Shown here: one piece after another, positions 9,141 to 49,200 of the stretch
Layout: every line of letters begins with the position of its first letter
Position numbering within the stretch: position 1 is the first letter of the stretch
Assembly (NCBI RefSeq): GCF_031769215.1
Contig: NW_026781965.1
Coordinates: 2,666,001-2,730,000 of the forward strand
Direction: 5' to 3'
Source: Ylistrum balloti
Lineage: Eukaryota
DNA length: 64,000 nt
Made by a program: the position numbers and the translations under genes
Notes under the pieces: model-generated
The model's input: only the letters and a program-made list of their open reading frames with translations
The model's database searches: none
Told to the model about the DNA's origin: nothing

Positions 9141-9565
9141 GTGTATCTTGGTGATAGTTTTTTAGTGATGATGTTTTACTGAAGATCTTCCTATTAGATG
9201 ACGAAACCATACAGCAGCCGAGTTTTTCACGCGCGTGTACGGGTAAGAACAAATACAGGAACAACAAAGCGCGTGCCATTCCGGCAGGATATAACTACAA
9301 CCTTTGGGAATAATTTATTTCATGAACATGAAAGAAAAAGTCGCCACATCCTTTTTAATCTGGTAACATTACGTCACGTGTTTTACATCAGTGTTAATAT
9401 AATCGATCATGCACTGCTCTCTTTGGTAGTCATTCATATACTCCGCAACACAGTATATTTCAGCACCATTCGGAAGTCCATTTTATGGACAGTAAGTTTA
9501 CAATAAGCATGGGTTATGGCAGAAAAACGGACTAACCGTTTTATGTATTGAGACCAACTAGACTA

Positions 9566-10550
9566 ACCGCTGTATGTTACATCACACAATCAAACTCTCC
9601 GCTTTATGTTACGTCACACATCAATCTATCTGCTGTATGTTACGTTACACAATCAAGCTACCCGCTGTGTGTAACGTCACACGATCAAGCTACCCACTGT
9701 ACGTTACGTCACACAATAAATCTATCCGCTGTATGTTACGTCACACAATCAAACTACCTGCTGTACGTTACGTCATACAATCAAACTATCAACTGTACGT
9801 TACGTCACACAATAAATCTATCCGCTGTATGTTACGTCACACAATCAAACTACCCGCTGTACGTTACGTCATACAATCAAACTATCCACTGTACGTTGCG
9901 TCACACAATAAATCTATCCGCTGTATGTTACGTCACACAATAAATTTATCCGCTGTATGTTACCTCACACAATCAATCTATCCACTGTATGTTACGTCAC
10001 ACAATAAATCTATCCACTGTATGTTACGTCACACAATAAATCTATCCGCTGTATGTTACGTCACACAATAAATCTATCCGTTGTACGTTACGTCACATAA
10101 TCAATCTATCCACTGTATGTTACGTCACACAATAAATCTATCCGCTGTACGTTACGTCACACAAACTATCCGCTGTATGTTACGTCAGATAACCGGACTA
10201 ATTGCTGTATGTTACGTGGCAAACCCGGCTATCCGCTGTACGTTACGTCATACAATCAAGCTACCCGCTGTATGTTACGTCAGATAACCGGACTAATTGC
10301 TGTATGCTACATCAGACAAACCGAGACCAACCGCTGCATGTTAGGTTTGGCAACCGTACCAATCGCTGAATGTTATGTCAGACAACCAGACGAGTCAATG
10401 TAAGTTAGATCAGACAAACCGACCAACCGCTTTATGTTAAATCAGACAACCGGACTAACTACCTTATGTTACGTCAGACAACCGCACTAACCGCAGTGTG
10501 TTACGTCAGACAACTGGGCTAATCGTTATAGGTTACGTTAGAAAATCAGA
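9566..10550. repeat. 32-bp minisatellite, degenerate towards the 3' end
   Basis: Unit CCGCTGTATGTTACGTCACACAATAAATCTAT; period 32 (10021 to 10053). Confidence 0.95.
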
Positions 10551-10624
10551 CTAGCCTCGTAATATTGAGATAAACAAACCGGATTCCACTGCTTGTATGT
10601 TTATTTATTTATCTGATATATATT

Positions 10625-20700: not shown

Positions 20701-21744
20701 TGGTGGCCATGGATTGACAAGGATCTTGATCAGCTCGCTAAGAACTGTAATGGTTGTCAGGGTAACAGAAACACAGCAAAAGAGGCGCCAGTTCACCCAT
20801 GGGAATTCCCCATGACACCTTGGCAAAGGATCCATGTGGATTTTGCTGGACCCTTCCTAAACAGTATGTTCTTGGTAGTGGTGGACGCCCACTCCAAGTG
20901 GCCCGAGGTCGTTCAGATGGGTTCTACAACAGCCTCAAAGACCATTGAAGTGCTACGGTGTATTTTCGCCAGAAATGGAATCCCTCAGCAACTAGTGAGT
21001 GATAATGGACCGCAATTTGTTTCTTCTGAGTTTCAAGATTTCATGCGTGGAAATGGGATCCATCACATTACATCGGCACCATATCATCCAAGGACGAACG
21101 GACTCGCGGAAAGGTTTGTTCAGACTTTCAAACAGGGACTAAAGTCAGCATTGAAGGATAACGGGTCGATACAGAGGAAACTACAATGTTTTCTGATGTC
21201 CTATAGGAACACGCCCCAATCTACTACAGGAGAGACACCTGCAAGCCTATTCATGGGTAGGAATTTACGGACAAGGTTGGACTTGCTACGGCCTAACTTG
21301 AAGGAGAGAGTGGAAAAGGCGCAAGCTCGAATGTGTAAGGACAGCAATCTGGGTAAAACTAGGAGTTTTGAAGTTGGTGACTAAGTCCAAGTAAGGGATT
21401 ACAGAGGAGATACCAAATGGGCACATGGAATTGTAAACGCAACAACAGGTCCCATTTCATACAAAGTGGAAACATCACCAGGACAGGTCTGGAGACGCCA
21501 CACCGATCAAATTCTGGGGTCGGTCCCTAAGGATGTATCCGAGAACCCATTGGTGGAGCATCTCGTAGAGGCTGATATGGTGATTGCCAAGCCTACAACC
21601 GTGACAAACTCCAGTGTTCCCCAGGATGTTGGTAAAGTAAACAGCCCAAAGGACTCAAGCAAGAAAGCGTCACCTATGACAAGGGTTGAACATCGGTACC
21701 CCGTGAGAACTAATCGGAGAGCACCGGTTAGGTTAGATTTGTAG
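17764..21744 (+). pseudogene. disrupted single gag-pol ORF
   Basis: Gag starts MAGRIGRLESFD and has two CCHC knuckles (CYRCTRPGHDPQKC, CNQCGKVGHIKKAC). Protease LDTGS; RT KIDLKNAY and IIDD; RNase H CDAS; integrase HHCC plus VDFAGP/SDNG/AER. Frameshifts near 17865 and 19890; premature stops at 20071-20073 and 21382-21384. Confidence 0.95.
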
Positions 21745-22216: not shown

Positions 22217-22836
22217 CTTAGATGAGTCCAGGTTTTCGCTGTACCGGGCAGACGGCCGACGTCGTGTCTATAGACGTACCCACGAGCGCTATGCAGATGC
22301 TTACGTGATAGAGAATGACCGCTTTGGAGGAGGATCGGTCATGGGGAGGGATCGCGCATGGTATCAAGACTCCACTGGTCGTTATTCAGGGAAATCTCAC
22401 GGCCGTCTGCTATAGAGATCAAGTCCTAGCGCCTCATGTTCTTACTCTAGTACAGCAGCGTCAACTAACGTTTCAGCAGGACAACGCTCGGCCGCATGTA
22501 GCGAGGGTATGCCGTGGTTATCTCGCAGCAAACAATGTCCCCACCCTAGACTGGCTCCCATACAGCCCTGACCTCTCCCCAATAGAACATTTATGGGACG
22601 AGTTGGACAGAAGGATAAAACGTAGGCCGAATCCTCCAATCAACGTCGCTCAGCTGGCGTTGGCGCTGGATGAGGAATGGAATCGTATACCAATGAGGAG
22701 GGTTAATGCCCCGATCAATTCAATGCACAAAAGAGTTCGTGCAGTTACTGCAGCTCGCGGGGGGGGGAGGGGGGGGGGGGGCACACACTACATTGATGGG
22801 TCCAGAAAGCACTTCATTTTGAGTGGGTACTCTTGA
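22217..22836 (+). pseudogene. Tc1 transposase, catalytic part (DD34E), frameshifted near 22342
   Basis: DESRF...GGGSVM/WGG...QQDNARPH...SPDLSPIEHLW; 34 residues counted between D and E. Removing the LTR element and one TSD restores WRRVLILDESRF in frame. Confidence 0.93.
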
Positions 22837-32757: not shown

Positions 32758-34641
32758 TTAATAGTCTAACGACAAAAGCGTTTTGAGGTTTTTGACCAGT
32801 TTTTCTTCTGCACGTGATCTGGTCGCTTTGTCCATCTCTGTGTTTTGTAGAACATCCGCTAATCCAGCCATCAATTTACTTTTGAGTTCTCTCACGTCTA
32901 CTGTATCGATCGTTTGACCGATTTTTGCCTGCTCGTCTGTTAGTAAAATATTTGCAACCTTAAATACTATATCAGGAATGACTGTTGCTGATGCTTGCTT
33001 ATCTAAAGAATGGGCTCTACCGATTTCTTCAAATATGTCGAGCGCTTTGTCAAAGAGAAATCTATCCCTCTCTTGCCCTGTTTTCTTTTTCATTTCCATA
33101 ATTTTGTCAAAAGGAAGGTCAATTACATTCACTTGGTCTTCATGAACTTTGTAAAAGAATGTTTGTAGATTCTGAACTGGATTCATGTAGATCGCCTCTA
33201 TTTTCTCGACGATACCAACGCGAACACTCCTCTCTAAACCTGCAAAGAGGTTGCTAGGAAAGAAGTAATGTTGAAGTCTACCCTCATGTAACCGATCCCT
33301 CATGTAGTCCAGGAGGTCCCTCAACACATTTAGCACGTCCTTGCTATTCTCTGAGTAGGTGACTGGGTCAGTTGACTCTAGCATCCAATATATAGCTGTT
33401 TTCCAGTGAAAGGTCGTCACGTCATCTGAGTATTCCTTTAGTATGGTTCTCTGAAAGGCCTTGATCATTAACAAACATTTTTTGTGTCCAGAAGGCATTT
33501 GCCTTGCCAGCGTGATTTCAGCTAGATTGCAGGAGAGGCAGAAATCTATTTCGGGCTTCTCATCTTTTACAGCTGGTTTGGCTACAACGAAATACTGGCT
33601 TCTTGAGATGGCATCCACCATTGGTTTCCTAGGCCAGTATCGAGTTCGCAGAATCCATTCGTGGATGAATTTAGGCGGCCCAGACAAACGAAGAGCGGGA
33701 ATAAAATCCTTCATGGATTTCTTATTGTATGTCGCTCGAACAGACTTGATCTTGGATCTGGTTTGTTTGACAAGTGACGAGGTGCAGTTTATTTCTGGAG
33801 GCTCTGTCCCTTTGTGATCCTCTTGTAAGTTCTCCCTGACGTCACCAATAGTTTCAGCAGCGGTACTCACATGGTTTTCTTCTTCTGCGGCAAGAACATT
33901 AAGATATGGTCTGAAGGTTTGATATAAATATGAGTCTGAATTTTCCTTTGTTTTGAAAAGCAGAAGTAATTTTGCTATAATTTCCATAGCATGGACAGCG
34001 CCATTGGACTTGTCATGGAAAAACTCTGAGTGGTTTACTCGTTCAGCATATGTCTTTCGCAATGCTTTGTCATGTCGATATCCTGGATTGGTTTTTGGTA
34101 AAAGTAAATCACAGCTCCAGTCTTCAAAGTCGACCGTATTAAACCCAGGCTTGATATCTGTGTCCATCGTAACCCGTGATATTCCATTTGCTTTAAATGA
34201 CTGGGGTCTAAGGAAAAGCTCCAACAAACCTTTCACGTGACCAAAGAGTGAAGGAGAAAGCTTTTTCAGTAGTGTTGCCGGAAGATACTCTCCATCAATG
34301 AGGTCTTTTCTTTCCACTTCTTTCATGAATGTCCCGTTTATATGTACAAAACATGGAAGATCCTCGCGATGCTTTAGATTCTCCACCGGCACTGTGATAT
34401 CCCCTATTACCAAGATGTCATAATCACCTTCATTTTGTTTTGTGCGGAGTCGCGTTCCTTCTTTTGTACTTCCTACCAATATACACCGTTCTTGTCCCAA
34501 CTCCTCCATTATCAGGTTGACGTACCGACAGTAAGTCGCCATTCTAAAGTCCTGTGGTAATGGTCGAGCCATTGCGACCAATTCGTCTAGCATCTCCGAC
34601 AATGACTTCTTAATTTTGACCGGAAGGTTGTCTTGATTCAT
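32758..34641 (-). CDS. Mab-21/cGAS-like nucleotidyltransferase (cGLR-type), copy A, 627 aa, single coding exon
   Basis: VGS(57-58)...GDYD(D73,D75); KDFIPAL (D312); YWP...FVVAK; LSCNLAE; KKCLLMIK; TFHWKTAIYW; LQHYFFPSNLF. Acceptor ttttacttccag| at 34647 lies just before the ATG at 34641, so the first 16 aa of the tracked ORF are probably intron. Confidence 0.9.
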   Translation of the reverse strand: MNQDNLPVKIKKSLSEMLDELVAMARPLPQDFRMATYCRYVNLIMEELGQERCILVGSTKEGTRLRTKQNEGDYDILVIGDITVPVENLKHREDLPCFVHINGTFMKEVERKDLIDGEYLPATLLKKLSPSLFGHVKGLLELFLRPQSFKANGISRVTMDTDIKPGFNTVDFEDWSCDLLLPKTNPGYRHDKALRKTYAERVNHSEFFHDKSNGAVHAMEIIAKLLLLFKTKENSDSYLYQTFRPYLNVLAAEEENHVSTAAETIGDVRENLQEDHKGTEPPEINCTSSLVKQTRSKIKSVRATYNKKSMKDFIPALRLSGPPKFIHEWILRTRYWPRKPMVDAISRSQYFVVAKPAVKDEKPEIDFCLSCNLAEITLARQMPSGHKKCLLMIKAFQRTILKEYSDDVTTFHWKTAIYWMLESTDPVTYSENSKDVLNVLRDLLDYMRDRLHEGRLQHYFFPSNLFAGLERSVRVGIVEKIEAIYMNPVQNLQTFFYKVHEDQVNVIDLPFDKIMEMKKKTGQERDRFLFDKALDIFEEIGRAHSLDKQASATVIPDIVFKVANILLTDEQAKIGQTIDTVDVRELKSKLMAGLADVLQNTEMDKATRSRAEEKLVKNLKTLLSLDY

Positions 34642-37600
34642 GTCAACTGGAAGTAAAAAGATACAAACAGAATTATCAATATCAAACATGTATAGGAATC
34701 AAGTCATATTTTGGTTGTGTAATTCAAATGTTTACACTCTGAGTACAGAAACTCATAACGACCAAAATTGATATCATTTTGATATTAACTAATTCACATT
34801 ATCAACATCTGCCTATTTTATCTGCTGGAAGACTTGATGTAGTGACTGTATGTTGAAATATACGTTATATACCCATTGGTGATGACTGTCGGTATACCGT
34901 GAGTCATTGTCTTGGTGATGTAGTGACTCTATGTTGTGATATGGCGATGGAAAGATTAGTGTTAAAAATTTCCTGTTTCTGATACAGAAAAATTTCTCAC
35001 GTTGTTTTCGTTACACCAACTGTTTCCGTGTCACGAGTACGATTTCACACGAATCTTATTACATATAACACGTGTATACTTCACTTAAGTATAGCTCTAT
35101 TAGACGGTATACGTCATACAGAGTATATAAAGCAGTTGTATCGACCTCACCACAATTTGTATAAGATATCATTTATGATGTGTCCTCTTCGAGATGTTTT
35201 GAGATAAATGCTGTTTCTGAATATGATTCGTCCATAGCAATAGATATCATCAAACGCAAAGTTGAAAACATTTTTTTAATTGAGTTTTTCCTGGGAGACA
35301 ATGATAATACGACACTTCAAAAACTGTCCAATGTTTAACCAAAACTGACTTCTCTATTAAAGCTGTCGTCGCTGGTTATAAAGCTGTCGGATTTGAATTT
35401 TAAACTGTAATGAACAAAGTAACAGTTTTCATTATGATTCTGATACATTCCTCGGAAAGGACACTGCTCATAATGTCATTGTATCTAAGGAAGTGGCGCC
35501 TTACTTGGAAACGACTATGAATACATCTGGGTTTATAAAATTGCATCATCTGTTCGAAGTATCATATGTTTGCATGTCCAATTCAACGTTATTAAAATCA
35601 TCAAAATATTATTGAAATGAAAGTCAGTGACGGTACATATCATGAAATCATATTTAATTTCATGTAATTATCTATGTGTACTTACATTTTGGCGTTATGT
35701 GTCCAAATTTCTGTTATTGCCTTGTGTGTTCCAGTTGCCGTATGATTTTCCCTGTTGCCTTTCATTATACCGTGTCCGGTATTCCGATCGCACGCCTACC
35801 ATGACGTGACACACACAGCTTGAGAGATTTCAAGGATTTCAATGAGTGGGTGATGCGGTTCATAGCCAATCAAAATTCTTCATTTCTCGGTACGGCCTTA
35901 GAGCTTAGGATTATATCTTATTGGTTGTATTAATGAGTAAACTTAAAGAATCAAGTATTCCAACTGTTTGTTATCATACTTCAAACACTTTGTACACAGG
36001 AAATAAGTTAAGATATGGGGAAAGGTCAATAGGAAAAAGTGGAAATTCCCGATGATTCTTCGTGTCCAACATCTTAAGATCTTTATTAGTGTTAAGTTAC
36101 TTGGGTATTTCCCTCTATTATCTTCTGTATGATTTCTCCAAAAATCAATTAGGTACCGTCGGGAGTTGTCATGTCAACTTTGAAAATCATTCAATGATAT
36201 AGATCGATAATCAACGACAACTGTCGTAATCCCAGATCGTCACCTGTCGGCCATTTTGTTATTCTAATCTCTTCCATAATGGACATAACTAAAGACTATT
36301 GAACAACTACAAATGAAGTACGAGAGTGATTACAATCTATCATCAAAACACAAGGTGTTCGTCTGTCCGTAACATCAACATTCCAATCAAATCTAGATTA
36401 GATGAACAATACACATCTAAGAACAACACAAAACCTAAACAGAAAATTGAAGAATGGTCAATGGAGTGCTTCTCAGGAAAAATTGATCAATATTAAATAG
36501 TCAAAATCCAAGATAACAATCTATTAGCTATTTCGTTTATTACATCAGTCCCACTATGGACCATGTACAACTAATGAAGACTACATAAGAACTGAGAGAA
36601 AGATCCATCTATTACTTTTCAAGAAATGGCGAAAACAAACTTCAACTGTCAAAATCCGATATGGCCATCTGTCAGTCAGTTTGTTCTTTGACAAGTCTAG
36701 AAAACTAAACCAGGACCAAATTAAGTTTTCTTATGGAATTCGAGAACGAGGAACCACGAACGGGAAGTAATTTTATTAACCCTCCATCTGATGGTGGTTA
36801 GCTAAACTGTATAAAGTAAGCGTCTTGTGTTAAATATAATCTATAGATATACATAATAATATATATAGCAAACTTTATTCACAATCTGATACTTGAAATA
36901 TTCTCTATCTATGGAGATCACTTGTGAAAATCAATCACGGTATTGGTAGGTCGGCGAGGCTAATATTCTCTTCTAGTTCCGATTTTGAAAAATCCCCTTG
37001 AACAGAGGTCCAATAGTTTAAACATGTACATTATTAGCAGATCGGAAAAGAGTTTATTCTTCGACCGTATGTTGGAATCAGGAACATTCATAAAATTACT
37101 GAACTTGTGACTTTCACGTTGATTTGCTGTCATTCATAGATAATTAAACAATAATATTAAATCATAACATATTCATTCTATTTCATTACACTTTCCAACC
37201 ACATCTTATAACATTATAACAATACATGTTCATTTTAAACTTGGGATTTCTTTGTCTGTAGGAGAATAGTATTGAAATCAAATGTTTTCTTACCTGTAGA
37301 TCAAAAATTAAAAACAATACTTAAGTATATATTATATTCTTTTACCAGTGCATGTAAGTCGTCACGTGCCTCTAATTGAAAGGAAAAGAAATTCCCCTCT
37401 GTGCAGGGTCTGAGGGAAACACACGAATCTTTTCCATCAAATCGGTAACATGTATGTTTTTTTTATAAATGTCATAAGGTACTCACAAAGTACCCTTTGG
37501 TAGTACTTCGCTTTGGCTAAAATCATTTTCCAAAATTAAAACTTTGATTGAAATATCCCCTCATTCTATATTTAAAACTTTTGGAAAGATTTGTCGTCAG

Positions 37601-39261
37601 TCCACAAGATATTCTTTGTCTCTGTATCATGTGAGATAATTTTAGAGATGTGAACGAACATGAAGATAAGGGTGCCATATACTCCATGGTGATTATTTCA
37701 TACACCCTAAAAAGAGAGACTAGTTTCAGATTCTAAAATTAAAGATATTTTTACCACTATAACACGTTCCTATGTGTATATGTCTACCTCCGCGCCCTCC
37801 ATATCCGTTAGACCTGTATTTGATAACTGAGGACAATTAACTTATCGTAAGGAAATTAGTCAGGTTTTTTTTATTCGTTTTGGTATTTCATAACAGAATT
37901 TGTTAAAATGAAAGTTGTTATAATATATCATTTCTCTTATCTTAATCATTATGCGGTACCTCCCTTTTAAACAAGGGTTTACATGACGTAGAGGAATTTG
38001 ATTATGCTGGCTATAACGCTTTGAAGAGTTGTAGAATAACGAAGCGCCTGTAAAATGCAGTACTATTTAATATCCGGCTTCAACAGTAAATATTTGATAT
38101 TTTTGTGTTTGAAAGTGTTTTCCATTTGCTTCCCTTACGTTCTGGGCCTGACAGATGAATTACTAAGAATATTCTCTGTTCTATCAGCAAAGTTTGGACG
38201 TATCCGTTTTTCCGTCCCTGGTCCCACATACCCTTTTAATACACAAAATGAAAGACATGTCATTGTGACTGACATATTCAAACATCTGCAGTACGAGATA
38301 TGCTGGTACTTTTACATAAAGATCGAATAATATTTATTTCACCTTTCAAACACTGATTTAATTTAGACCTAGGATTCCGTATTTGTAATATTGCAGACAA
38401 CAGAAGTGTGAATGTCTAAGTAAGACGGAGTTGTCTTTTCCTTACCACACGTGTGGACACTTATGGATGGAGCAATGACTAATGATTGCGTCAGTAATGA
38501 TTTAAAAGGCGACATAATTTTTAAGAAAGTATAACACAAGACAGATTTCTATTTATTTCTGGATAAATATCACGATACACATATGTACAAAAATGGCTAT
38601 TAATAAACCTGGACCTCTTTTTTACACCGGATAAATACATAGAGCATCTGATAAATATAGTCATACCAGTCGGAAGAAAGCAATGCGAATAATTATTTAT
38701 ATAGAAAATGGATTTGAAATCTTTGGAATACACCTTCATCTTTAAAGGACCGGCTATAACAATCGAAAAAATAGACGTCCCAAAGTAATAGAATCATGTT
38801 CAAAATGTGTAAGCATGTGGATTTATATGGCTGCATTAATTTTCTACATTTATTAGTATCGTGAATATGCGTCTACGGGGATGTTTTAATACTGATATAC
38901 ATAGATTTTTCTATATCGGATGATGAGACTAGTCTAATATTTTTCATTAAACCTAATCTCTGGCGAAGTAAACAGAAAAAAATCGTGACGACTTTCATAA
39001 GTTCCACATGAGAAGGAAACGAATGTAAGAATTTGTTTATCACATAAAACTATCTTAGTGTTGTATAAATATTAGTGGAAATAGACTGACATAAAATTCA
39101 TTTTCAATATTCTCTCTAAATACCAAGTTGTTTGATGACGTCACACTATTTATGACATTATCAAGTTATAACGTCACAATTGAAGCCTTCAGTCAATAAC
39201 AGATACGTGTAGTCATAACACAATTTAGATGAGTGATATTTCACTGATAACGGGGGTAATG

Positions 39262-39526
39262 TTAACAAGGCATCGGAAACATTAGAAATCCTCCAGTTTC
39301 CATTTATAATGACGTTGTGTTGCGTCTAAGTAACGGTGACCTTAAGGTTGACACTGGCATACTGAAACAGGTTCAAGTCGTTCAAGGTATCATAATACTT
39401 TACCAAAATGTGAAGTTTGATTAAAATCGGTTGAGAAATGAAGTGGCTAGAGTGATGACAAAAATATACATACGTACACACCTGCGTACAAACGGAACGC
39501 TATATCCTCGTAAAGGGATAATAATA
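39262..39526. mobile_element. possible short non-autonomous element (Helentron/HINE-like)
   Basis: Starts TAACAAG and ends with a small hairpin, TATATCCTCGTAAAGGGATAATAA. The interior resembles common mollusc interspersed repeats; family assignment is by recall only. Confidence 0.3.
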
Positions 39527-39797
39527 AGTTATTAATCAATTACATCGTGTACTGAGGTACATACACACTAATAAAAACACTGTGACGTTAACATTGTTGT
39601 CAACATGGAAGTTTGTGCCGAGGATGTATGCATTCTGGTTCTTATCTCAAAGTAAATAATTTATATCTTTTCTTGGTAACGAAGAATAAAGTTTGGTCAA
39701 AGTTAACACAAACATATACACGAAGAAAACTCAAACATAAAAACAAAGAAAGTGCAAAATTTAAAACGTAAATGTTAAATAGTGCACAAGTCAACTA

Positions 39798-41900
39798 TTA
39801 CTTCTTTCCTGCCGAGAAATAGGCTAAGGCCGCTTTCTTGGCTTCCTTCTCCGCCTGTCTCCTAGTGCTTCTGTCAGCTCCTAATGTAGAGAAAAGACCT
39901 TTGACACTTTCCATTAGGTGGTCCTTTGATACGGTCGGTGGAGTTGTTGGTCCATTTTCCTCTTTATCTTTTCTCCTGTTTTCTTCATCTGTTAGGGCAG
40001 TTTCCGCAATTTGCAGGATCAGGTTAGGAATCGGTACTTTTGGTTTTTCAATCGAATCTGTCGATGCTGGTTTGGCAAATCCTTCAAGGACATTCACAAA
40101 TGCATCTACCGACCGCTCATCCCTTCTGTGTTCTACTTGATTCTTCACTTCATCTAACGTGCTCACTGGAATTTTTACAACTCGTCGAGCATGGGCTCGT
40201 TCTTTTTCAAGACAAAAGAAGGATCTCAAATAGAAAATTGGATCCAAATGGATCTTTTCTATTTTCTCGACGATAGCAACACGAATGTCTCTCTCCAAAC
40301 CTGCAAATAAGTTGCTGGGAAAGAAGTAATGTATCAGGCATCCTTCATGCAGCCTGTCTCGCATGTAGTCTAGGAGCTTTCTTAGCACATCCAGTACGTC
40401 TCCGCTGTTCTCTGAGTAGGTAGCTGGGTCGGTGGATTCAAGCATTCGATATATAGCTGTTTTCCAGTGAAAAGTCGTCACGACCTCAGAATATTCCTCT
40501 AGAACGCTTCTCTGGAATGCTTTGATCATCAGCAAGCATTTCTTATGGCCAGGAGGCATTTCTCTCGCCAGGATGATTTCAGCCAGGTTGCAGGATAGAC
40601 AGAAATCTATATCTGGTTTTTCATCTTTCACTGCAGGTTTGGCAACAACGAAAAACTGACTTTTGGAAATATCCTCTACAATTTCAGGATTTGGCCAATG
40701 CCCTCCGAGGACCCGCTGCATCCATTCTTGTATAAATTTAGGTGGTTCAGATAATCGAAGTGCTAAGATAAAGTCTTTCTTAGACTTGCTACGATATGTT
40801 GCGTATACTTCTGTGTCTTTTTTCTCCTCAGACTTGCTGTCCACACTTTCTTTTTCTGTGATTCCGCTTACAGTGTTTTCTTCCGGTGTCGATATTCCAT
40901 TCTTACCGAACGTTTCTTCAGCTGGTGTAGAAACATCCATATTGTCTGTTTTCGCATCACAGCATTTCTGAATGTCTTCTTGGGTCATACAATCTTTGTC
41001 GGAAGTGTGCATCCTGGCTTTCTTGCCTCTGCTACTCGTTGCTATCTCGTTTTCCTGAAGATGGCAAGTAGAGTCTACAATTTGTTCCTTGTCATCATTG
41101 GAATGCTCGTCAGTTGGCCTTTTCTTCGACGTGCCACTCGTTTTACCTGCTAAAGCGCTCAAAATGGGACCGAACTGCTGGTAAACTAACCCTGTTGATG
41201 TATCATTGTTTTTCATGTTTTCTATGAAGTCAATAACAGCAGCAAAAGACGCTAATATATTGTTCCCATCTTCTTGTAGAACCTTTGAACTTTTCCTACG
41301 CTCCTCAAACTGTTGGTATAAAGCCCGTTCACTTGCAGATCTGGCATTTCTCTTCACACTCAGATCTTTGCAATCCCAGTCTGCGTAATTTACCAAACTG
41401 TAACCAGGTTTCATGCTGGTGTTGATAGCTAAGTGTGGAGTGTTTCGACCATGGGACGTGGTAGATCTGCTGACGATATCGAAAATCCCTTTCAAGTGTG
41501 GAAATGCCAATATGCTGACATTCTTCAACAACCATGTTGGTAGGTATACGCCATCTATCAGCTGATCACAAAACTCTTGTCCCATGAAGGACCCTTTGAT
41601 GTGAACAAAGCAGGGTAGGTCTTCTCTGTACACCAAACAATCAGTAGGGACTATGAAATTACCAGACAAGATATAATCGTAATCTCCTTCGTCCTGTTCC
41701 GAGCGTAGACGTGTTCCTTCCTTTGTACTCCCGACTACTTGACAGTGTTCTATGCCGAACTCAGAAACAAAACTGCTGATGTAAGAACAGTACTGATCTT
41801 GTCGTTTGTCATTCGGTACTGGATGTGTCATGGCCATTAATTTGTTTAACAATTCTGTGAACGACATGGTCCCGACGTCTTGAGATCCACCTTCTGCCAT
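39798..41900 (-). CDS. Mab-21/cGAS-like nucleotidyltransferase (cGLR-type), copy B, 700 aa, single coding exon
   Basis: VGS...GDYD(D73,D75); KDFILAL (D376); HWP...FVVAK; LSCNLAE; TFHWKT; HYFFPSNLF. Acceptor ttgtattgtag|GTAACCATG. Confidence 0.92.
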   Translation of the reverse strand: MAEGGSQDVGTMSFTELLNKLMAMTHPVPNDKRQDQYCSYISSFVSEFGIEHCQVVGSTKEGTRLRSEQDEGDYDYILSGNFIVPTDCLVYREDLPCFVHIKGSFMGQEFCDQLIDGVYLPTWLLKNVSILAFPHLKGIFDIVSRSTTSHGRNTPHLAINTSMKPGYSLVNYADWDCKDLSVKRNARSASERALYQQFEERRKSSKVLQEDGNNILASFAAVIDFIENMKNNDTSTGLVYQQFGPILSALAGKTSGTSKKRPTDEHSNDDKEQIVDSTCHLQENEIATSSRGKKARMHTSDKDCMTQEDIQKCCDAKTDNMDVSTPAEETFGKNGISTPEENTVSGITEKESVDSKSEEKKDTEVYATYRSKSKKDFILALRLSEPPKFIQEWMQRVLGGHWPNPEIVEDISKSQFFVVAKPAVKDEKPDIDFCLSCNLAEIILAREMPPGHKKCLLMIKAFQRSVLEEYSEVVTTFHWKTAIYRMLESTDPATYSENSGDVLDVLRKLLDYMRDRLHEGCLIHYFFPSNLFAGLERDIRVAIVEKIEKIHLDPIFYLRSFFCLEKERAHARRVVKIPVSTLDEVKNQVEHRRDERSVDAFVNVLEGFAKPASTDSIEKPKVPIPNLILQIAETALTDEENRRKDKEENGPTTPPTVSKDHLMESVKGLFSTLGADRSTRRQAEKEAKKAALAYFSAGKK

Positions 41901-42107
41901 GGTTACCTACAATACAAAACGGATTACCTCTTATTAGAATAAATCATTATTTGTTTAATCCAGCGACGTATCTGATTCTTTATTTATCTGATGAACATAC
42001 TTTTATTATCGAAATATAAAGTAGTTGTGAATGCAATACTTTCATATTTTGGTAGTTAGTACATCATTGAAACTCACTGTTTTCAGAAAGAGGTCAGTTT
42101 TGATGGT

Positions 42108-42953
42108 CTACTTTCGGTTTGGTACTCTAGGCTAGATCAGCCAAATATCTTAATGTCCTACTTTCGGTTTGATATTCTAGGCTAATGAAATGACATTTTA
42201 AAACATCATGCACATGTAATGCCAGCCTTTTAATCACACAATGGTGTAAATTTATTTTCAATAACAGTACATTTACACTATCAAAGCAAAGCACGTGGTT
42301 TTATAACTAAAGATGCATTGTACACTTTTAACAATGGAGCTGCTAGATTCACTTCTGATGAAGCAGAATTATACAAACATGAAATATAAACCGTATTCGA
42401 ATGTTTACCGTCCTATGCAAAATCAGTGTAATACAATCTATAGAATTTGAAAGGAATTTTTCCATTTTGCTTACCGCTACTGTCTTCCTTTATCTTCTGC
42501 GACACCGTAGGAATGTGGTACCTTTTGGACCTGTCCGAAACTTATAACTAATACCGAGGGATTTCCATTTGATTTATAAACAGCAGTGATGTAGTTTGGG
42601 CCTTCAACAGGAGGTTGGAACTTCCCAATGCTGATATCGATTGAAATTTTCCTAATATTTAAATATGTTTTGGCATATGTTTATCACGTCTGTACTGAAG
42701 TGCGATATATCATACTAAATAGTCTAAAAAAAACTATCATAAATGTCTCGTATGAACAACAGGGACCTTACGATACCTCGATTTACATGTTTACCCGACC
42801 AGAACTTAGCTTACGTGTACATAATATACACAGACACTGACTGCTCTCAGAATTTATTACACGGTTAAACAGAAACTAGACTTGGAAAACTTCCGCCAAT
42901 GGTCATAGTCATAGCCATGTACTTTCGTTTAAAAGTTCACAAAGTGAAAGTGA
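42108..42953 (-). promoter_or_regulatory. putative first (UTR) exon and promoter region of copy B with IRF-E-like and kB-like motifs
   Basis: Donor GCG|gtaagc at 42474. ACTTTCGGTTTG occurs twice (42110, 42160); GGGATTTCC at 42558; GGAACTTCCC at 42617; AAAGTGAAAGTGA at 42941. Motif matches only. Confidence 0.3.
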
Positions 42954-43367
42954 TCCTTGAAATTAAATGAGCAGTTAGGAATATGAATCGTCTTTGGGAT
43001 TTTCAAATAATTGTTGCAAAACAAGTTCAAAATGTAGTCAAGACTAAAATGCTTACAACAACATCTACGATTTATCGTTTATTAACTTGCATTGAATATG
43101 AAGTATTTTACAGGGATTGGTTGGAATATTGACATGATAAAAACCTAAATTTTATTGTTAATGGTTTTAGAAATTCTATTCTCAGAAACACCGGATTAAG
43201 AATTGGAGCTTCTCAAGTTTCTATTCCCTAAATTTTCTTTCCAGCGTAAAGCTTCCTATTCATAAACATTAGACCAAAAGTCAAAGATAATAGGGGTCAC
43301 AAACGGTAACATTAAACTCAGTATCAGGTCTCTAAATCCTAAACTGTCATAACCAACCAAAGATTCT

Positions 43368-43715
43368 ACATAATCCAGACCTACACTCGACAATACAGGT
43401 TCTTAGCCATCAAATGTAGACTCTTGTTACACACTCTGACATAATCCAGACCTACACTCGACAATACAAGTTCTTACCCATCAAATGTAGACTCTTGTTA
43501 CACACTCTGACATAATCCAGACCTACACTCCACAATACAAGTTCTTACCCATCAAATGTAGACTCTTGTTAAACACTCTGACATAATCCAGACCTACACT
43601 CGACAATACAAGTTCTTATCCATCAACTGTAGATTTTTTGTTAAACACTATTACGTAATCCAGATCTACACTCGATACTACACGTTCTAACCCATCAACT
43701 GTAGACTCGTGTAAA
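43368..43715. repeat. 71-bp tandem repeat, about 5 copies
   Basis: TAATCCAGA recurs at 43371, 43442, 43513, 43584 and 43656. Confidence 0.92.
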
Positions 43716-44421
43716 AATCTCTCCTGATTCTACATCTTACACAAGAAACTGTATACACGAGGCTACAGCTTTTGACCCCAGAATCGCGAGGTGGAATCAA
43801 CATCTATTTCTACACCCGGGAGAGCATAGCATAGACCACACTACCCAAGTGTTTTCCAAAAATAAAGTTTTCATCATATGATCCGTTTATTGAAGTGATA
43901 GATTGATTCTGTATTTGATACTTGGGTCTATAAACTCCCATCACAGCAGATCAAAGTCCAACAAGATATTGACTTTTATAGGCAATTTTATAGAGCCAGC
44001 ATACCAATTCGGTCTACTTCATAAATATCAGCGATGGACATAAACAGAGTTAATAATATAAGTTAGTTGTTTGATATAAAATTATACATAAACATTCGTT
44101 GTGTTATATATGTGATAAGTGGAAGCCGTTACTACCGTCAAACGTCTGTAATGTTTTGGTTAGGCTGTATAACAGGACAGGTGACGATGCTACAGTCAAA
44201 TACATACCATTTATAACAAAATCTACACATAGAAGTGCTATACAATGAAGCATTTTATATGTTCATTAATCAATCATTCTTAATCAATAAGGAGCCATTA
44301 TCAGCATGTTGTCAAGCTGACAATACTTTATAACAACATTTTTAAAATGCTGAAGTATGAGAGAACGATAAACAAATATTCCACATTTTTAATTTAAAAG
44401 AGAAGTGCACAATGCAAAATG

Positions 44422-46278
44422 TTATTTAATTTCTTTCAGTAAACCAGATAGTTCGAATACGGTAAATAACGCAAACATTGTGTCGTGTGTTTTCGATTCA
44501 GGCGCTGTAAGATAAGCGTCAAATGTCTTCATGATTCTGTCGACTGGTACCATTAATGCTCTCCCCTTTCTCACCAAATCCTTCGTTAAATCGGTACAAA
44601 TCGCTGCGGCCACCTTCACCACCGCTTTTTTTAGCAATGGTTCATCGTCAAACGACTGAGGTGGTTCTCTTACAAACTGTTCTAGAGCAGAAACAATCAT
44701 ATCAACGACAAATTTGTCTGCGTCCATGTGTAGCGATTTCTGTAGTTTTTCTACGTAGGATCGAGACACTTCTATAGTCTTAACACTACTGTTTACATCC
44801 TCATATCTGAAAAACTCCCGAATCGCTTCAACGGGATCGTCAAGAATTTCTGTGAGTTTATCAACAATCATGCCTGTAGTTATGGCGTCCAAATGTCCGA
44901 TGATGTTGCTATGGTTGAAGTAATGCTGTAGATTACATTTATGAAGACATGTAAGCATGTAATCTATTACTGCCTTCACTAAGCCTATCACATTTTCTTC
45001 CATGTCGTTCGTAAGCTGTGAGTAGTCCACATTTTCTGATACCCAGTACAACGCCGTTTTCCAGTGGAACGTAGCAAGTTTATCAGAATATTCCTCTAAC
45101 ATGCAGTTTTGATACGCTTTGATTATAAGAAGACAGTTCTTTTGGACAGGATGCATACATGCAGATAGCTGAATCTCTGCCGAGATGTAGGACAAATAAA
45201 AGTCAGTACTCTCTTCTGACGCTTCTTGTGACACCGGTTTACACACAACATAAAAATCACTGTTACAAATACTGTTCACAACGTCACTTCCTGGCCAAAC
45301 CTTGCCACATACGCGTGCTTTCCACGTATCTATATGTTTTGGTGGACCGTCAACAGGAAATGCTGCTATAAACCTCTTCTGAGATTTCCATCGGTAACTT
45401 GCATAAACGACGTCTTCGCTGTTTGTAGGTCTTGGTGACCCCAGTTCTTCCTCAGCGGCCGTCGAGTTTTGTTGGGTAACTCCGAGCGAGGTTCTTGACG
45501 AACTGTTGATTTCGTCTGTTACTGCATTTACCAAAGGACTCAAATATTGAAAGACTTGTGAATGAATCCCATGATTGTCACTCAGAGTTTTCGCCAAAAG
45601 TGCCAGCTTTCTCAAAACTAGAATAACATTGGCAGTCATGTGCATCAAAAATGGCGAATTTCTTATCCTTTGGCGAAATAGGCCGTAAGCTTTGTCAGCA
45701 TCGGTTGTAGTTGATCTTGATGCATTCTGGATTTCGTCACAGAGCCAGTCGGTGTAGTTGGTAAGGGTAACACCTGGCTTGTTTGGTATATTTATGTTTA
45801 TATGAGGGATGTGCTGACCTTGGAATGTACTAATCAACAACACCAAGGAGAATAAGCCACGTAGACCTGTAAAAGCTTCGCTTCTGACTGTTTTGAGAAG
45901 GTTGCTAGGGAGATACATTCCATCAATTAGCTCAACCGGAAGTTCATCATGTAATTCCCTGCCGTCGATTCGCACAATACATGGGTCTTTTTCATTGTAA
46001 TGAAGAAAATTTGATCTGATTTGTATTTCGGAAATTATCAGATAGTCAATGTCACCTTGATCCTGGTTTAACCGAAGCCTAGTCCGTTCAGCAGTACTAC
46101 CAACTAACATGCATCTCTCGTCACCATACAACGACAGAAGGCTGTTTGTGTAACGGCAGTAACGATCCTGGTCGTAGTCATTCGGTACAGGTGCGGCTTT
46201 TTTTAATAATTCTTTCATTAATTGATCAAAGTTCTCTGAGCTGTAGAGTTCACTTTCGTCATTATCGCTGTCACTCAT
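44422..46278 (-). CDS. Mab-21/cGAS-like protein (cGLR-type), copy C, 618 aa, third catalytic Asp replaced by Arg
   Basis: VGS(60-61)...GDID(D76,D78); KRFIAAF (R302); VWP...YVVCK; LSYISAE; TFHWKTALYW; LQHYFNHSNII. The tracked ORF opens on GTG; acceptor ctttcgttccag| at 46291 precedes the ATG at 46278. Confidence 0.88.
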   Translation of the reverse strand: MSDSDNDESELYSSENFDQLMKELLKKAAPVPNDYDQDRYCRYTNSLLSLYGDERCMLVGSTAERTRLRLNQDQGDIDYLIISEIQIRSNFLHYNEKDPCIVRIDGRELHDELPVELIDGMYLPSNLLKTVRSEAFTGLRGLFSLVLLISTFQGQHIPHININIPNKPGVTLTNYTDWLCDEIQNASRSTTTDADKAYGLFRQRIRNSPFLMHMTANVILVLRKLALLAKTLSDNHGIHSQVFQYLSPLVNAVTDEINSSSRTSLGVTQQNSTAAEEELGSPRPTNSEDVVYASYRWKSQKRFIAAFPVDGPPKHIDTWKARVCGKVWPGSDVVNSICNSDFYVVCKPVSQEASEESTDFYLSYISAEIQLSACMHPVQKNCLLIIKAYQNCMLEEYSDKLATFHWKTALYWVSENVDYSQLTNDMEENVIGLVKAVIDYMLTCLHKCNLQHYFNHSNIIGHLDAITTGMIVDKLTEILDDPVEAIREFFRYEDVNSSVKTIEVSRSYVEKLQKSLHMDADKFVVDMIVSALEQFVREPPQSFDDEPLLKKAVVKVAAAICTDLTKDLVRKGRALMVPVDRIMKTFDAYLTAPESKTHDTMFALFTVFELSGLLKEIK

Positions 46279-49200
46279 TCTTAAATGCGCCTGGAACGAA
46301 AGATCAGCTAATATCACAATCCAAACCAAAACATTCCACAAGCAACTCTGACATGCATCGGATTTATACACAAGGAGTTAAAAATAGCTCACGCTTACAC
46401 ATACCGAGCAGAAGAAATACCATAATATGCACTGAAGATGTGCAATATTTACACGACCTTTGAGTATTAACTTCGGTTTGTCGGCATGTTTAGTTCATGG
46501 ACATAATATACAAGCTAATACTAGCTTGTTGTCTCTCAAGATCGTGTTATCTGTATGGCCTTACCTTAGATTTACTCGCCTTCTTTCTTCCACAGCTGCT
46601 TTTCCAAACTTAAGCCGGTACCCGAAAGATCGCGAGCGGTGTGCTATGGCTGTTCCGTTTGTTATAAATCAGGATTTGTTCGTATCTCTGTAGAGTTACA
46701 TAGGCACCAGACCAATACACTGGAGTGAATGGACTTAGTTCTGGGCTTTGTAAGACACATGTAACTGAATATGAGTGTATACATGGTCGGCTAGATATAA
46801 TCGTCTGGTAGGTCACAGTATAGTGCATATAGAGGTACTTTAACAATAACAAATAATTCTTAATCACAATCAGTTTATTTATAACAGTATATCACAGTGG
46901 GTTACGTATCCGCCGTTTTTCTCACTCGTTTAGACGGAAACACAAAGTGAAAAAATATAATATACTGCTATCCGGAATATTTCTAATTACAACCCTTGAT
47001 ATCAGTAGTTTTGTGTCAATATACATCGCAATTTTACAATACGTTGCGATATCATTCTCAGGTACATACAATTCCCCGGTGTATTATACTTCCATTAACA
47101 CTTTTTACCATGTATTATACCTTTTTCTAACATATTTAGTAATATTAATACCGTCTCTTGTTTCTTATAACTCAAAAGTCCTGACTGGTTAGTCAATTAA
47201 CAATGACACTAAGATTGCCTGGACGGCCAATAGGTGCACCGTTAAACTAAACTCCCATGTTCCAATAAATAAGAGAAGAAAAGCGCTCTTAATTCAGTAT
47301 AATTTAAGCTAATTACTGTAAAATTCTTGGTTTTTGCGGGAATTATTTTTCGTTGATTCCATTTGTACTCTTTGTCCAGGAATCCATATGTTCAGTCCAC
47401 AAACTGATACAAGTGCATGTATAGATTTCTATTTTGTGGGGCTTTGTTTTCGTGGTTTTTAACCAACAAAGCCCCACGAAATATGTGATTTTACACAATA
47501 CCTATGTCAATAACGTTGATGAAAATCGTGTACATGTGTATCTGATCTTATTAACTGTATGATAGCGAAACAATCTGCATTTTATGAAACAGAATATTCA
47601 TCTACCATACGAAAAACATTAACAAGATGATGATCAATTCTCTTAATAACATTGCATAAAGTACATTCTTACCTTGAGAATCAAACCCGGTGTCTATATC
47701 TGTAAAGCCACTGAACGTCAGTCGCACACCATTCACACTCACTACACTAAATCATTACTAGATATTTAATACAAAGTTTTCAGTATAAAACAATGTGTGT
47801 TTCCTCATCAATATGGCATATTTTAATACAACTGCTGACCTGTTTGATACATGCATGTCAAATGCACTGTTTACGACCAGGCAGTTGTCACAGATGGAGC
47901 ATCGTCAGTGAAGATTCGTTACACAGGGGACGTAACGTTAATGATTTTAACGGAATCAAGACAGGTCAGGCACTCCAATCAGCATACAAACAAGGTTATA
48001 TATAGTAACCATTGTAGTTTAACTGTTGAGAAATTTAAATAATACATCCATTTTAATTAAATATTTCATTTCCGTTTCCTCATATCACAACGCTATCTTA
48101 ATCTTCTTTTGTCGAATGTTTACTTCAACAACATATATAACCGCATATTTCCATATTATGTTTACTTATCACATTTTAAATAAAGAAAAGCATAAGCAAA
48201 CATACATATCTTCATAGAATTGACGCTGATAAGGACACCAATTGTGTATATAAAATTAATTTCTCGTTGATAACAATGCCATGGTAACAGCGTAGCGCTG
48301 ACATTGTGAGACTAATAATGAAAGAAACACCTGTTCGGATTTAGATGATTGTACTTTTACCATGAATTAATGAATATCTTACGTATAAAGATATGTAAGG
48401 ATATAAATATCATAATATCAAAACACGATATTAATGGGTTACATTCATATTTCGGAAAGCTTTAGGTGAATATGTTACCTTATATCTGAAATATTGGTCG
48501 ATCTCCAGTCTAGTGTATAACAATCTAATGTGTATCTAGTGTTCTCAACAAAACCTGTATCACTTAACAAGTATTTAATGGTCACAACATATCCCACATC
48601 CCCAAGCATGCCTGTGATGTTCTAAATACCTTGCGTTAAAATAATGCACCAGCTTCATGTTTTATGCCATAATCCAAATCAATTCATGCTTAACGGGATA
48701 TTTCGCGCAATTTCTGGCTGTTCTGTACCTTTAAAGAACTCATACTAATGTCTATTAATTCTATTGTTAGCATCAAAATATCTAAATTTAACCATCTAGA
48801 TACAGAGCATCGGGAAATTCGGAACTGAAGGAACACTGGATCATAGGTTTTATGTAGAGTGTTAGGTAAATACACAAGTTTATATGCTGTTCAATAAAAT
48901 TTCTGTTGGGAATGCAATTTTCTTTGTTGATTTTTTATAATTTACACAAATATCTCATCCTATTCGGCAATAATTTATTAATCTTATGACCATTTAAACC
49001 GAAACGATCTCGAGAATCGTTGTCGCAGACAGAGATTTTGTTAATCCATTCGTGAATTTCTTGCCTTTAGGATTCCCTCTCGCTTTTCTTTGAAGTTTTT
49101 TTTTCATAAAATAGAGCATACTTTGCCCCTGTCCTTTTCTATGGACACCACAGATGTCCAGGTGTAAATGTTCGTGTGTATTTTGCATATTTTACAAAAA

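What the first reader, a model, noticed from the sequence alone, without database searches (positions are those of the whole stretch)
32758..46278. Tandem trio of intact, divergent cGAS-like receptor (Mab-21 NTase) genes
Seen: three co-oriented minus-strand ORFs (627, 700 and 618 aa) with no stops or frameshifts, in a window where every transposon is decayed. Each carries GS-x14-DxD and the Mab-21 C-lobe motifs. Established: cGLRs are animal innate sensors that make cyclic dinucleotides for STING, and the family is expanded in bivalves. Inference: this is a locally diversified immune sensor array, possibly an uncharacterised subfamily given the shared unusual architecture.
Basis: partly seen in the sequence, partly recalled or inferred. 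Interest (0 to 1): 0.8.

Follow-up and report, generated by a model that had tools for sequence, protein, structure and literature searches.

The report
Conserved scallop cGAS-like receptor trio
Three neighbouring intact scallop genes encode divergent relatives of the immune enzyme cGAS; different scallop genera have kept the trio together, one copy has lost a catalytic residue yet is the best conserved, and the subfamily is already catalogued but its function is untested.

Summary
Three co-oriented, intronless minus-strand ORFs of 627, 700 and 618 aa are intact. All pass the Pfam Mab-21_C cut-off. A confident model of copy A matches the whole cGAS catalytic domain (Z 26.9, 326 of 355 residues).

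- **Age of the array.** It is not a recent local diversification. The same C-B-A trio, in the same order and strand, exists in Pecten and Mizuhopecten. Argopecten keeps C and B, and A is a decayed fragment there. All three genes are under purifying selection (omega 0.10-0.29).
- **Catalytic residues.** A and B keep every catalytic residue. C has Arg or Lys in place of the third metal-binding Asp in all four genera, yet it is the most constrained copy and has conserved upstream blocks. It is probably a pseudo-enzyme that selection has kept.
- **Gene conversion.** A and B exchange their Mab-21_C segment by gene conversion.
- **Already catalogued.** The Mizuhopecten ortholog of A was sample 13 of the 140-protein screen of Li et al. 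2023. It is not among the labelled active enzymes.
- **Ligand.** The proteins are neutral to acidic (pI 4.9-7.0), unlike known nucleic-acid-sensing cGLRs.

No expression, ligand or product data exist. Verdict: new members of a known kind, moderate interest.

The parts
32758..34641 (-). Gene A: intronless cGLR paralog, 627 aa plus stop, full catalytic set
   Evidence: ORF. AF2 model pLDDT 83.9, pTM 0.82. Match to the cGAS catalytic domain: Z 26.9, rmsd 3.4 A, 326 residues. Orthologs in P. maximus at 59% and M. yessoensis at 55% aa identity in the MAFFT alignment.
39798..41900 (-). Gene B: intronless cGLR paralog, 700 aa plus stop, full catalytic set, longest insert
   Evidence: ORF. 46% identical to A. 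Orthologs in four scallop genera, omega 0.14-0.20. D376 retained.
44422..46278 (-). Gene C: intronless cGLR paralog, 618 aa plus stop, third catalytic Asp replaced; probable conserved pseudo-enzyme
   Evidence: ORF. 31% identical to A. 618 aa in all four genera, omega 0.10-0.15. R or K at the third acid in all four.
34417..34473 (-). A: GS-x14-DxD motif (G57 S58 ... D73 D75)
   Evidence: G57, S58, D73 and D75 are invariant in 56 family members.
33706..33708 (-). A: third catalytic Asp, D312
   Evidence: Asp in 52 of 56 family members. Aligns with the YDI Asp of MB21D2.
33745..34116 (-). A: family-specific insert (residues 176-299): helical part 191-251, then a disordered linker 254-296
   Evidence: Secondary structure and pLDDT of the model. 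The spacing from D75 to the third acid is 223-300 residues in the pectinid orthologs, against X50-90 in the published cGLR motif.
33148..33543 (-). A: Mab-21_C (C-lobe) segment, residues 367-498; tract of A/B gene conversion
   Evidence: Pfam. A/B nucleotide identity here is 0.76-0.80 in the window, 0.89-0.95 in P. maximus and 0.89-0.93 in M. yessoensis, against about 0.4-0.6 elsewhere. The segment tree groups by species.
32761..33147 (-). A: C-terminal helical tail (residues 499-627) outside the cGAS fold
   Evidence: The cGAS alignments end at model residues 491-499. Folded alone, the tail has 5 helices and pLDDT 79.9. Only generic helical-hairpin matches, Z up to 8.2 over 47 residues. A tail of 121-155 aa is present in 54 of the 55 other rows of the 56-sequence family alignment.
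41676..41732 (-). B: GS-x14-DxD motif
40773..40775 (-). B: third catalytic Asp, D376
46045..46101 (-). C: GS-x14-DxD motif (retained)
45373..45375 (-). C: R302 in place of the third catalytic Asp
   Evidence: The residue is R in the window species, M. yessoensis and A. irradians, and K in P. maximus.
46347..46468 (-). Conserved non-coding block proximal to C (about -190 to -69 from the ATG), holding an invariant GCTATTTTTA (TATA-like) at 46379-46388
   Evidence: blastn to three other genera, 74-77% identity. Four-genus alignment.
46608..46818 (-). Conserved non-coding block distal to C (about -540 to -330), holding an invariant GCTCGCGAT at 46629-46637
   Evidence: 78-92% identity across four genera although synonymous sites are saturated.

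Best explanation
The locus holds three real, intact, intronless paralogs (C, B, A in the direction of transcription) of one discrete, divergent subfamily of cGAS-like receptors. These are Mab-21 superfamily nucleotidyltransferases, here in a scallop genome.

**Shown:**
- The full cGAS-type bilobed catalytic fold is present.
- The fold is interrupted by a family-specific helical-plus-disordered insert just before the strand that carries the third catalytic acid, and it is followed by a five-helix tail of no recognised fold.
- The trio is an old syntenic block that predates the split of four scallop genera, and all three genes are under purifying selection.
- A and B keep the whole catalytic set.
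- C has a basic residue in place of the third metal-binding Asp in every genus, yet it is the most constrained copy.
- A is the least constrained copy. It is a decayed fragment in Argopecten and may carry a frameshift allele in another individual of this species.
- A and B homogenise their C-lobe by gene conversion.

**Inferred:**
- A and B are ligand-gated nucleotidyltransferases. On binding an unknown and probably non-nucleic-acid ligand, they would make a cyclic di- or oligonucleotide that one of the genome's STING proteins reads.
- C is a pseudo-enzyme kept for a non-catalytic role, such as binding a ligand or nucleotide, or regulating A and B.
For: **Fold.** AF2 model pLDDT 83.9, pTM 0.82. 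Foldseek top hits are MB21D2, cGAS and oyster Cv-cGLR1, with E down to 9e-11. VIA-align gives Z 26.9, rmsd 3.4 A, 326 of 355 residues of mouse cGAS over model residues 13-494.

**Sequence.** Pfam Mab-21_C is above cut-off in all three. The family profile hits PDB 8gjy 'cGAS-like receptor 1' at 1.5e-17, MB21D2 at 5e-11 and cGAS at about 3e-8.

**Catalytic set.** G57, S58, D73, D75, E375 and K394 are invariant in 56 family members. D312 is present in 52 of 56. The exceptions are the C orthologs and one Mytilus protein.

**Synteny.** The order C-B-A, on one strand and with single-exon genes, is found in P. maximus and M. yessoensis. C and B are found in A. irradians.

**Selection.** omega is 0.23-0.29 for A, 0.14-0.20 for B and 0.10-0.15 for C. 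Every region has omega below 0.5, and the tail of C has 0.09.

**Copy C.** R or K at the third acid in four genera. Conserved upstream blocks occur only at C.

**Copy A.** Only fragments remain in Argopecten. A 1-bp deletion at 34455 appears in a DNA contig of another individual.

**Gene conversion.**

**Ligand.** pI is 4.9-7.0 in all orthologs, whereas published nucleic-acid-sensing cGLRs have pI above 8.5. The ortholog of A was in the screen with poly I:C and dsDNA and is not labelled active.

**STING.** STING_LBD matches lie on three contigs of the genome.
Against: - There is no expression evidence. The only run that holds the sequence is DNA.
- No biochemical activity is known for any member. 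One ortholog was screened and is not among the labelled active enzymes. That fits an unknown ligand, but it fits a non-enzymatic role equally well.
- The Pfam NTase-domain model matches only partially and below threshold.
- The residue before GS is Val, not the published Q/T. The spacing to the third acid (223-300 residues) is far outside the published X50-90.
- Only A was modelled. B and C are judged by alignment.
- dS is near saturation, so the omega values are rough.
- The pseudo-enzyme call for C rests on one residue.
Confidence: 0.6

Rival explanations
1. All three are non-enzymatic Mab-21-like proteins, comparable to MAB21L1/2. They would keep the fold for a structural, developmental or regulatory role and make no nucleotide signal.
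For: The ortholog of A was not labelled active in the 140-protein screen. The proteins are neutral to acidic. The Pfam NTase model is sub-threshold. C has already lost a catalytic Asp yet is the most conserved copy, so the fold is clearly useful without catalysis. The closest human relative by fold, MB21D2, is itself an orphan.
Against: GS, both DxD acids, E375 and K394 are invariant in 56 members, and the third Asp is kept in 52 of 56 across distant bivalves. That pattern is hard to explain without catalysis. According to Li et al., MAB21L1-type proteins lack a predicted functional active site.
Confidence: 0.2
2. They are classical nucleic-acid sensors like cGAS (dsDNA) or Drosophila cGLR1 (dsRNA).
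For: They have the same fold and the same catalytic motif. The core of window copy A alone has pI 8.55.
Against: Full-length pI is 4.9-7.0 in all eleven pectinid proteins, and net core charge runs from -21 to +4. Published nucleic-acid-sensing cGLRs have pI above 8.5. The M. yessoensis ortholog was incubated with poly I:C and 45-bp dsDNA and is not among the labelled active enzymes.
Confidence: 0.1
3. This is a rapidly diversifying, arms-race immune array produced by recent local duplication, which is the first reader's sense of 'locally diversified'.
For: The arrangement is tandem. The family is expanded in Mytilus. The genome has at least 90 Mab-21_C loci. A evolves faster, is lost in Argopecten and may segregate a null allele.
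Against: The three-gene block has kept its order and strand in Pecten and Mizuhopecten, and C and B also in Argopecten, with dS of at least 1. No further subfamily member exists in this genome. omega is below 0.3 overall and below 0.5 in every region. C sits on a long branch that is shared across genera.
Confidence: 0.07
4. The ORFs are unexpressed relics or annotation artefacts.
For: No RNA evidence could be obtained.
Against: Open frames of 618-700 aa have been kept in up to four genera with omega 0.10-0.29. The upstream blocks of C are conserved. When a copy really decays, as A has in Argopecten, it shows as fragments.
Confidence: 0.03

Closest known systems
Animal cGAS-like receptors (cGLRs) as catalogued by Li et al. 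2023 (PMC9980059); the closest entry is screen sample 13, M. yessoensis XP_021346622.1
   Same: That protein is the direct ortholog of gene A: 53-55% aa identity, the same synteny and the same architecture. The family shares the GS...DxD...D active site and the caged NTase plus helix-bundle fold.
   Different: No activity label was given in the screen, so ligand and product are unknown. The spacing to the third acid is 223-300 residues against X50-90, and Val precedes GS. Copy C fails the active-site criterion.
Human MB21D2 (PDB 7lt1), an orphan cGLR
   Same: It is the best Foldseek hit (E 9e-11). By sequence profile it was the best PDB hit with the 3-sequence profile and the second best with the 56-sequence profile. 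The third Asp aligns. It is also an orphan with no known ligand. One bivalve relative is auto-named 'Protein MB21D2'.
   Different: Only 11-12% identity in the structural alignment. Orthology was not established. MB21D2 is shorter (the PDB chain has 464 residues). Whether it has an equivalent insert or tail was not examined.
Mammalian cGAS catalytic domain (e.g. PDB 4k9b)
   Same: The whole catalytic domain superposes: Z 26.9, rmsd 3.4 A, 326 of 355 residues. The [ST][ST][YF]H.K and E-in-AE motifs of the C-lobe align.
   Different: There is no basic N-terminus or overall basic charge. An insert of 111-188 aa and a tail of about 130 aa have been added. Identity is 14-19%.
Oyster Cv-cGLR1 (PDB 8gjw) and PDB 8gjy 'cGAS-like receptor 1'
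   Same: 8gjy is the best PDB match of the 56-sequence family profile (E 1.5e-17). Cv-cGLR1 superposes at Z 25.5. Cv-cGLR1 is a bivalve cGLR.
   Different: Cv-cGLR1 is a characterised dsDNA-activated enzyme. The trio's subfamily is distinct: within the genome the next relatives match only the C-lobe, at 25-28% identity.
OAS / OASL-type pairing of active NTases with a catalytically dead paralog (an analogy from general knowledge, not tested here)
   Same: An inactive paralog of a nucleotide-signalling NTase is kept under selection beside active ones.
   Different: This is a different branch of the NTase superfamily. No evidence here shows that C acts in the same pathway as A and B.

Membership tests
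cGLR (criteria of Li et al. 2023) | Active-site motif h[QT]GS X8-20 [DE]h[DE]h | tested here: met
   A and B have VGS-x14-DYD[IY], and C has VGS-x14-DIDY. GS and both acids are invariant in 56 members. One deviation: Val instead of Q/T before GS.
cGLR (criteria of Li et al. 2023) | Third acidic residue h[DE]h, 50-90 residues after the DxD | tested here: inconclusive
   The Asp is present in A (D312) and B (D376), but the spacing is 236 and 300 residues because of the insert. The ortholog was nevertheless accepted by the authors' curation. In C the residue is Arg (R302), so C does not meet this criterion.
cGLR (criteria of Li et al. 2023) | [quoted passage not shown] | tested here: met
   The structural alignment covers model residues 13-494, both lobes. 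Pfam Mab-21_C is above cut-off.
cGLR (criteria of Li et al. 2023) | Predicted structural homology to known cGLR or CD-NTase enzymes | tested here: met
   Z 25.3-26.9 to cGAS and 25.5 to Cv-cGLR1. Foldseek probability 1.00. Only copy A was modelled.
cGLR (functional definition) | Ligand-dependent synthesis of a nucleotide second messenger | not testable with these tools
   The only indirect datum is that the M. yessoensis ortholog of A was screened with poly I:C and dsDNA and carries no activity label.
cGLR-STING pathway | A STING receptor encoded in the same genome | tested here: met
   PF15009 STING_LBD matches above cut-off on three contigs. Pairing with these cGLRs is not shown.
Nucleic-acid-sensing cGLRs (cGAS, cGLR1 type) | High pI (above 8.5) and a basic ligand-binding surface | tested here: not met
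   Full-length pI is 4.9-7.0 in all eleven pectinid proteins. The surface electrostatics of the model were not computed.
MB21D2 orthologs | Specific orthology to vertebrate MB21D2 | tested here: inconclusive
   MB21D2 is the top Foldseek hit, but with the 56-sequence profile PDB 8gjy scores better. No reciprocal or phylogenetic test with MB21D2 was run.
Death-fold or other signalling-domain fusion cGLRs | A recognisable appended signalling domain in the tail | tested here: not met
   No Pfam hit in the tail. Folded alone, the tail gives only generic helical hairpins, Z up to 8.2 over 47 residues. The Atlas search was uninformative.

The most novel reading that the evidence does not exclude
Copy C is a catalytically dead but ligand- or nucleotide-binding partner that has been kept beside two active paralogs since before the scallop genera split. 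It would work with A and B as an enzyme/pseudo-enzyme sensor module. The family-specific helical insert and tail would form a recognition surface for a non-nucleic-acid (cationic or protein) signal. That would be a cGLR activation mode not yet described.
Probability: 0.12. Interest if true: 0.75.

Novelty: new member of a known kind. Interest (0 to 1): 0.4.

Why it matters
cGLR radiations in bivalves are known, but almost all members are orphans.

This trio is a small, stable and tractable case inside that radiation. It has three genes with clear one-to-one orthologs across scallop genera, two with a full active site and one with a conserved loss of a metal-binding Asp. Constraint runs C > B > A.

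That makes it a convenient system for three questions:
- What do acidic, non-nucleic-acid-type cGLRs sense?
- What does a conserved cGLR pseudo-enzyme do?
- Why is gene conversion confined to the C-lobe?

The finding does not change the picture of the family. It refines it.

Tried and rejected
1. **Expression.** The look-up of sequencing runs found one holder only. Read laying showed it to be genomic DNA, a collinear 7.4-kb contig with no joints, so nothing can be said about transcription.
2. **Logan contigs.** Contigs with A-like and B-like orthologs from another scallop (L005, L006) have no poly-A tail. Whether they are RNA or DNA is undetermined.
3. **Tail domain.** The Atlas feature search was uninformative. 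Folding the tail alone and searching 48,161 PDB representatives gave only generic helical hairpins. A death-fold or other known signalling domain is not supported.
4. **ISRE/IRF-type promoter module.** No GAAANNGAAA or kB-like site lies within 1.2 kb upstream of A, B or C in the window, and no such site is conserved in the orthologs. A and B have no conserved upstream sequence at all.
5. **Literature.** Searches by the orthologs' LOC identifiers and by scallop + cGAS + STING found nothing specific.
6. **Restriction to pteriomorph bivalves.** The word-indexed searches suggested it. The exhaustive profile search rejected it. That search found full-length relatives in Arcida, Venerida and Myida and a partial-length relative in Unionida. 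No named non-bivalve was among the 20 representatives looked up, but most had no name, so the range outside Bivalvia is open.
7. **Complex prediction for C with A or B.** Not run. The chains exceed the size limit and I make no binding claim.


Full report
**Observation.** The window holds exactly three long minus-strand ORFs in the stated interval: 32758-34689, 39798-41900 and 44422-46371. A is 46% identical to B and 31% to C. tblastn finds no other copy or fragment in the window. There are no N bases.

All three pass Pfam Mab-21_C above the gathering score (40.6, 29.3 and 25.8 bits against 24.1). The Mab-21 NTase model matches only its last third, and below threshold. GS-x14-DxD is present in all three.

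**Fold.** I built an alignment of 56 homologs. With it, AlphaFold2 gave a confident model of A: pLDDT 83.9, pTM 0.82, with disorder only at residues 1-8 and 254-296.
- Foldseek ranks human MB21D2, cGAS and oyster Cv-cGLR1 at the top, with probability 1.00.
- VIA-align superposes 326 of 355 residues of mouse cGAS at Z 26.9 and rmsd 3.4 A, over model residues 13-494. Both lobes of the cGAS-type enzyme are therefore present.
- Two parts lie outside that fold. The first is an insert between the strand ending near residue 173 and the strand carrying D312. It has helices at 191-251 and then a disordered linker. The second is a five-helix tail at 499-627.
- Folded alone, the tail (pLDDT 79.9) matches nothing better than generic helical hairpins (Z up to 8.2 over 47 residues). 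It is not a death-fold or any other recognisable signalling domain.
- 54 of the 55 other rows of the family alignment carry a tail of 121-155 aa.

**Catalytic residues.** Across the 56 members, G57, S58, D73, D75, E375, K394 and an aromatic residue at 411 are invariant. The third acid, D312, is Asp in 52. The exceptions are one Mytilus protein (His) and the C orthologs. C has R in the window species, M. yessoensis and A. irradians, and K in P. maximus (the A. irradians C protein is in the pectinid alignment only). D312 aligns with the corresponding Asp of MB21D2, and the C-lobe motifs align with those of cGAS.

Compared with the published cGLR motif h[QT]GS X8-20 [DE]h[DE]h X50-90 h[DE]h, the family has Val before GS and a spacing of 223-300 residues to the third acid.

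**Evolution.** The organism is a scallop. The best named hits are P. maximus and M. yessoensis proteins at 53-58% identity.
- **Synteny.** In P. maximus the same three genes lie in the same order and orientation (C 618 aa, B 692 aa, A 650 aa), each as a single exon. M. yessoensis is the same. A. irradians has C and B. At the expected place of A it has only out-of-frame fragments covering residues 1-42 and about 335-527.
- **Selection.** Nei-Gojobori estimates give omega 0.23-0.29 for A, 0.14-0.20 for B and 0.10-0.15 for C, with dS about 1-2, which is near saturation. By region, every part has omega below 0.5. The disordered linker is the loosest (0.31-0.46), and the tail of C is among the tightest (0.09).
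- **Family tree.** A and B are sisters (support 99). C sits on a long stem branch (0.99) shared by the three scallop genera in that tree.
- **Copy number.** In the window's own genome (648.5 Mb) there are at least 90 Mab-21_C matches, mostly inside open frames of 620-760 aa. Only the trio belongs to this subfamily. The next hits match the C-lobe alone, at 25-28% identity.
- **Conclusion.** The array is an old, stable block, not a recent local burst.

**Gene conversion.** Nucleotide identity between A and B is about 0.4-0.6 along most of the genes. In the Mab-21_C segment (A residues 367-485) it rises to 0.89-0.95 in P. maximus, 0.89-0.93 in M. yessoensis and 0.76-0.80 in the window species. 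Ortholog identity there is only about 0.72-0.82. Maximum-likelihood trees of the N-lobe and of the tail recover the three orthogroups. The C-lobe tree instead pairs A with B within P. maximus and within M. yessoensis, with bootstrap 98 each. The C-lobe of A and B is therefore repeatedly homogenised, while the N-lobe, insert and tail diverge.

**Regulatory hints.** Only C has conserved non-coding sequence upstream. There are two blocks, at about -540 to -330 and -190 to -69 (window 46608-46818 and 46347-46468), conserved at 74-92% in all four genera. They include an invariant TATA-like GCTATTTTTA at 46379-46388. No ISRE or kB-like site lies within 1.2 kb upstream of any of the three genes.

**What is already known.** Li et al. 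2023 (PMC9980059) catalogued about 3,000 cGLRs and noted extreme radiations in bivalves, with 73 in M. yessoensis and 61 in P. maximus by their table. The M. yessoensis ortholog of A, XP_021346622.1, is sample 13 of their 140-protein biochemical screen (Table S3). Its Note column is blank, whereas the 15 active enzymes are labelled there. The screen used poly I:C and a 45-bp dsDNA.

The authors report that nucleic-acid-sensing cGLRs have pI above 8.5, and that acidic cGLRs may respond to other ligands. All eleven pectinid proteins of this subfamily have pI 4.9-7.0.

The exhaustive profile search shows full-length relatives in ark clams, venerid clams and Mya, and a partial-length relative in a unionid mussel. 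The subfamily is therefore spread across Bivalvia. Whether it reaches other phyla is open. A coral protein next to it in Table S3 seems, by eye, to have an insert at the same site, but I could not align it.

**Mechanism.**
- **Shown:** the fold, the catalytic motifs, selection, synteny, and the presence of STING ligand-binding domains on three contigs.
- **Inferred:** A and B are ligand-gated nucleotidyltransferases that make a nucleotide second messenger for STING, and their ligand is probably not a nucleic acid. C is a pseudo-enzyme kept for a non-catalytic role.
- **Confidence:** I put about 0.9 on membership of the cGLR fold family. I put about 0.5 on A and B being active enzymes, and about 0.6 on C being catalytically dead but functional.
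- **Main rival:** the whole subfamily is non-enzymatic. The invariance of the catalytic residues across distant bivalves argues against that.

**Expression.** The only sequencing run holding the locus is genomic DNA of another individual, with about 0.4% differences. Its contig lacks one base at 34455, just after codon G62 of A and upstream of the DxD. That would truncate A. It rests on one contig and needs genotyping. With A's higher omega and its decay in Argopecten, it fits A being the most dispensable copy.

**Verdict.** These are new members, in one more scallop species, of an already catalogued but functionally orphan cGLR subfamily. The added value of this analysis is fourfold: the conserved trio structure, the conserved pseudo-enzyme C, the C-lobe-restricted gene conversion, and the evidence against nucleic-acid sensing. 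Interest is moderate.

Noticed in passing
window 34455 (inside gene A, after codon G62): The DNA contig of another individual (run X1, k-mer depth about 10) lacks one base here. That would frameshift A before its DxD motif, so it may be a segregating null allele. It rests on one contig only. The same contig carries 8 SNPs in the ORF, 5 of them non-synonymous.
   Followed up: partly
L004:16208-17074 (Argopecten irradians, downstream of the B ortholog): Only out-of-frame fragments of an A-like gene remain (residues 1-42 and about 335-527). Copy A has become a pseudogene in this genus, while B and C stay intact.
   Followed up: yes
window 46347-46468 and 46608-46818: These non-coding blocks upstream of C are conserved in four scallop genera, although synonymous sites are saturated. 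They include invariant GCTATTTTTA and GCTCGCGAT motifs. A and B have nothing comparable upstream.
   Followed up: partly
window 1-12000: A run of minisatellite arrays with periods of 42, 40, 82, 46, 32 and 37 bp. The first alone has 93 copies over 3.9 kb. The first 6 kb have strong strand asymmetry, with GC skew about -0.6.
   Followed up: no
window 15091-16365 (-): A 424-aa open frame whose first 175 residues match Pfam Tmem26 (E 6e-43, profile positions 123-285 of 285). This is probably the last coding exon of a TMEM26-like gene.
   Followed up: no
window 17925-21384 (+): A Ty3/gypsy-like retroelement with two long open frames of 676 and 422 aa. They carry zinc knuckle, aspartyl protease, RT, RNase H and integrase domains. 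Not every transposon in the window is decayed. A DDE_3 transposase fragment lies at 22315-22836. I observed these only.
   Followed up: no
genome G000, many contigs (e.g. C524, C941, C12, C798): There are at least 90 Mab-21_C matches. Most lie in uninterrupted open frames of about 620-760 aa and often in clusters. This is a large intronless cGLR repertoire, of which the trio is the most divergent branch by Mab-21_C score.
   Followed up: no
PMC9980059 Table S3, sample 12 (Stylophora pistillata XP_022779765.1): By eye, this coral cGLR has a long helical-plus-acidic insert right after its GPAFT strand, the same site as in the scallop family. This hints that the insert may predate bivalves. It was not aligned here.
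   Followed up: no
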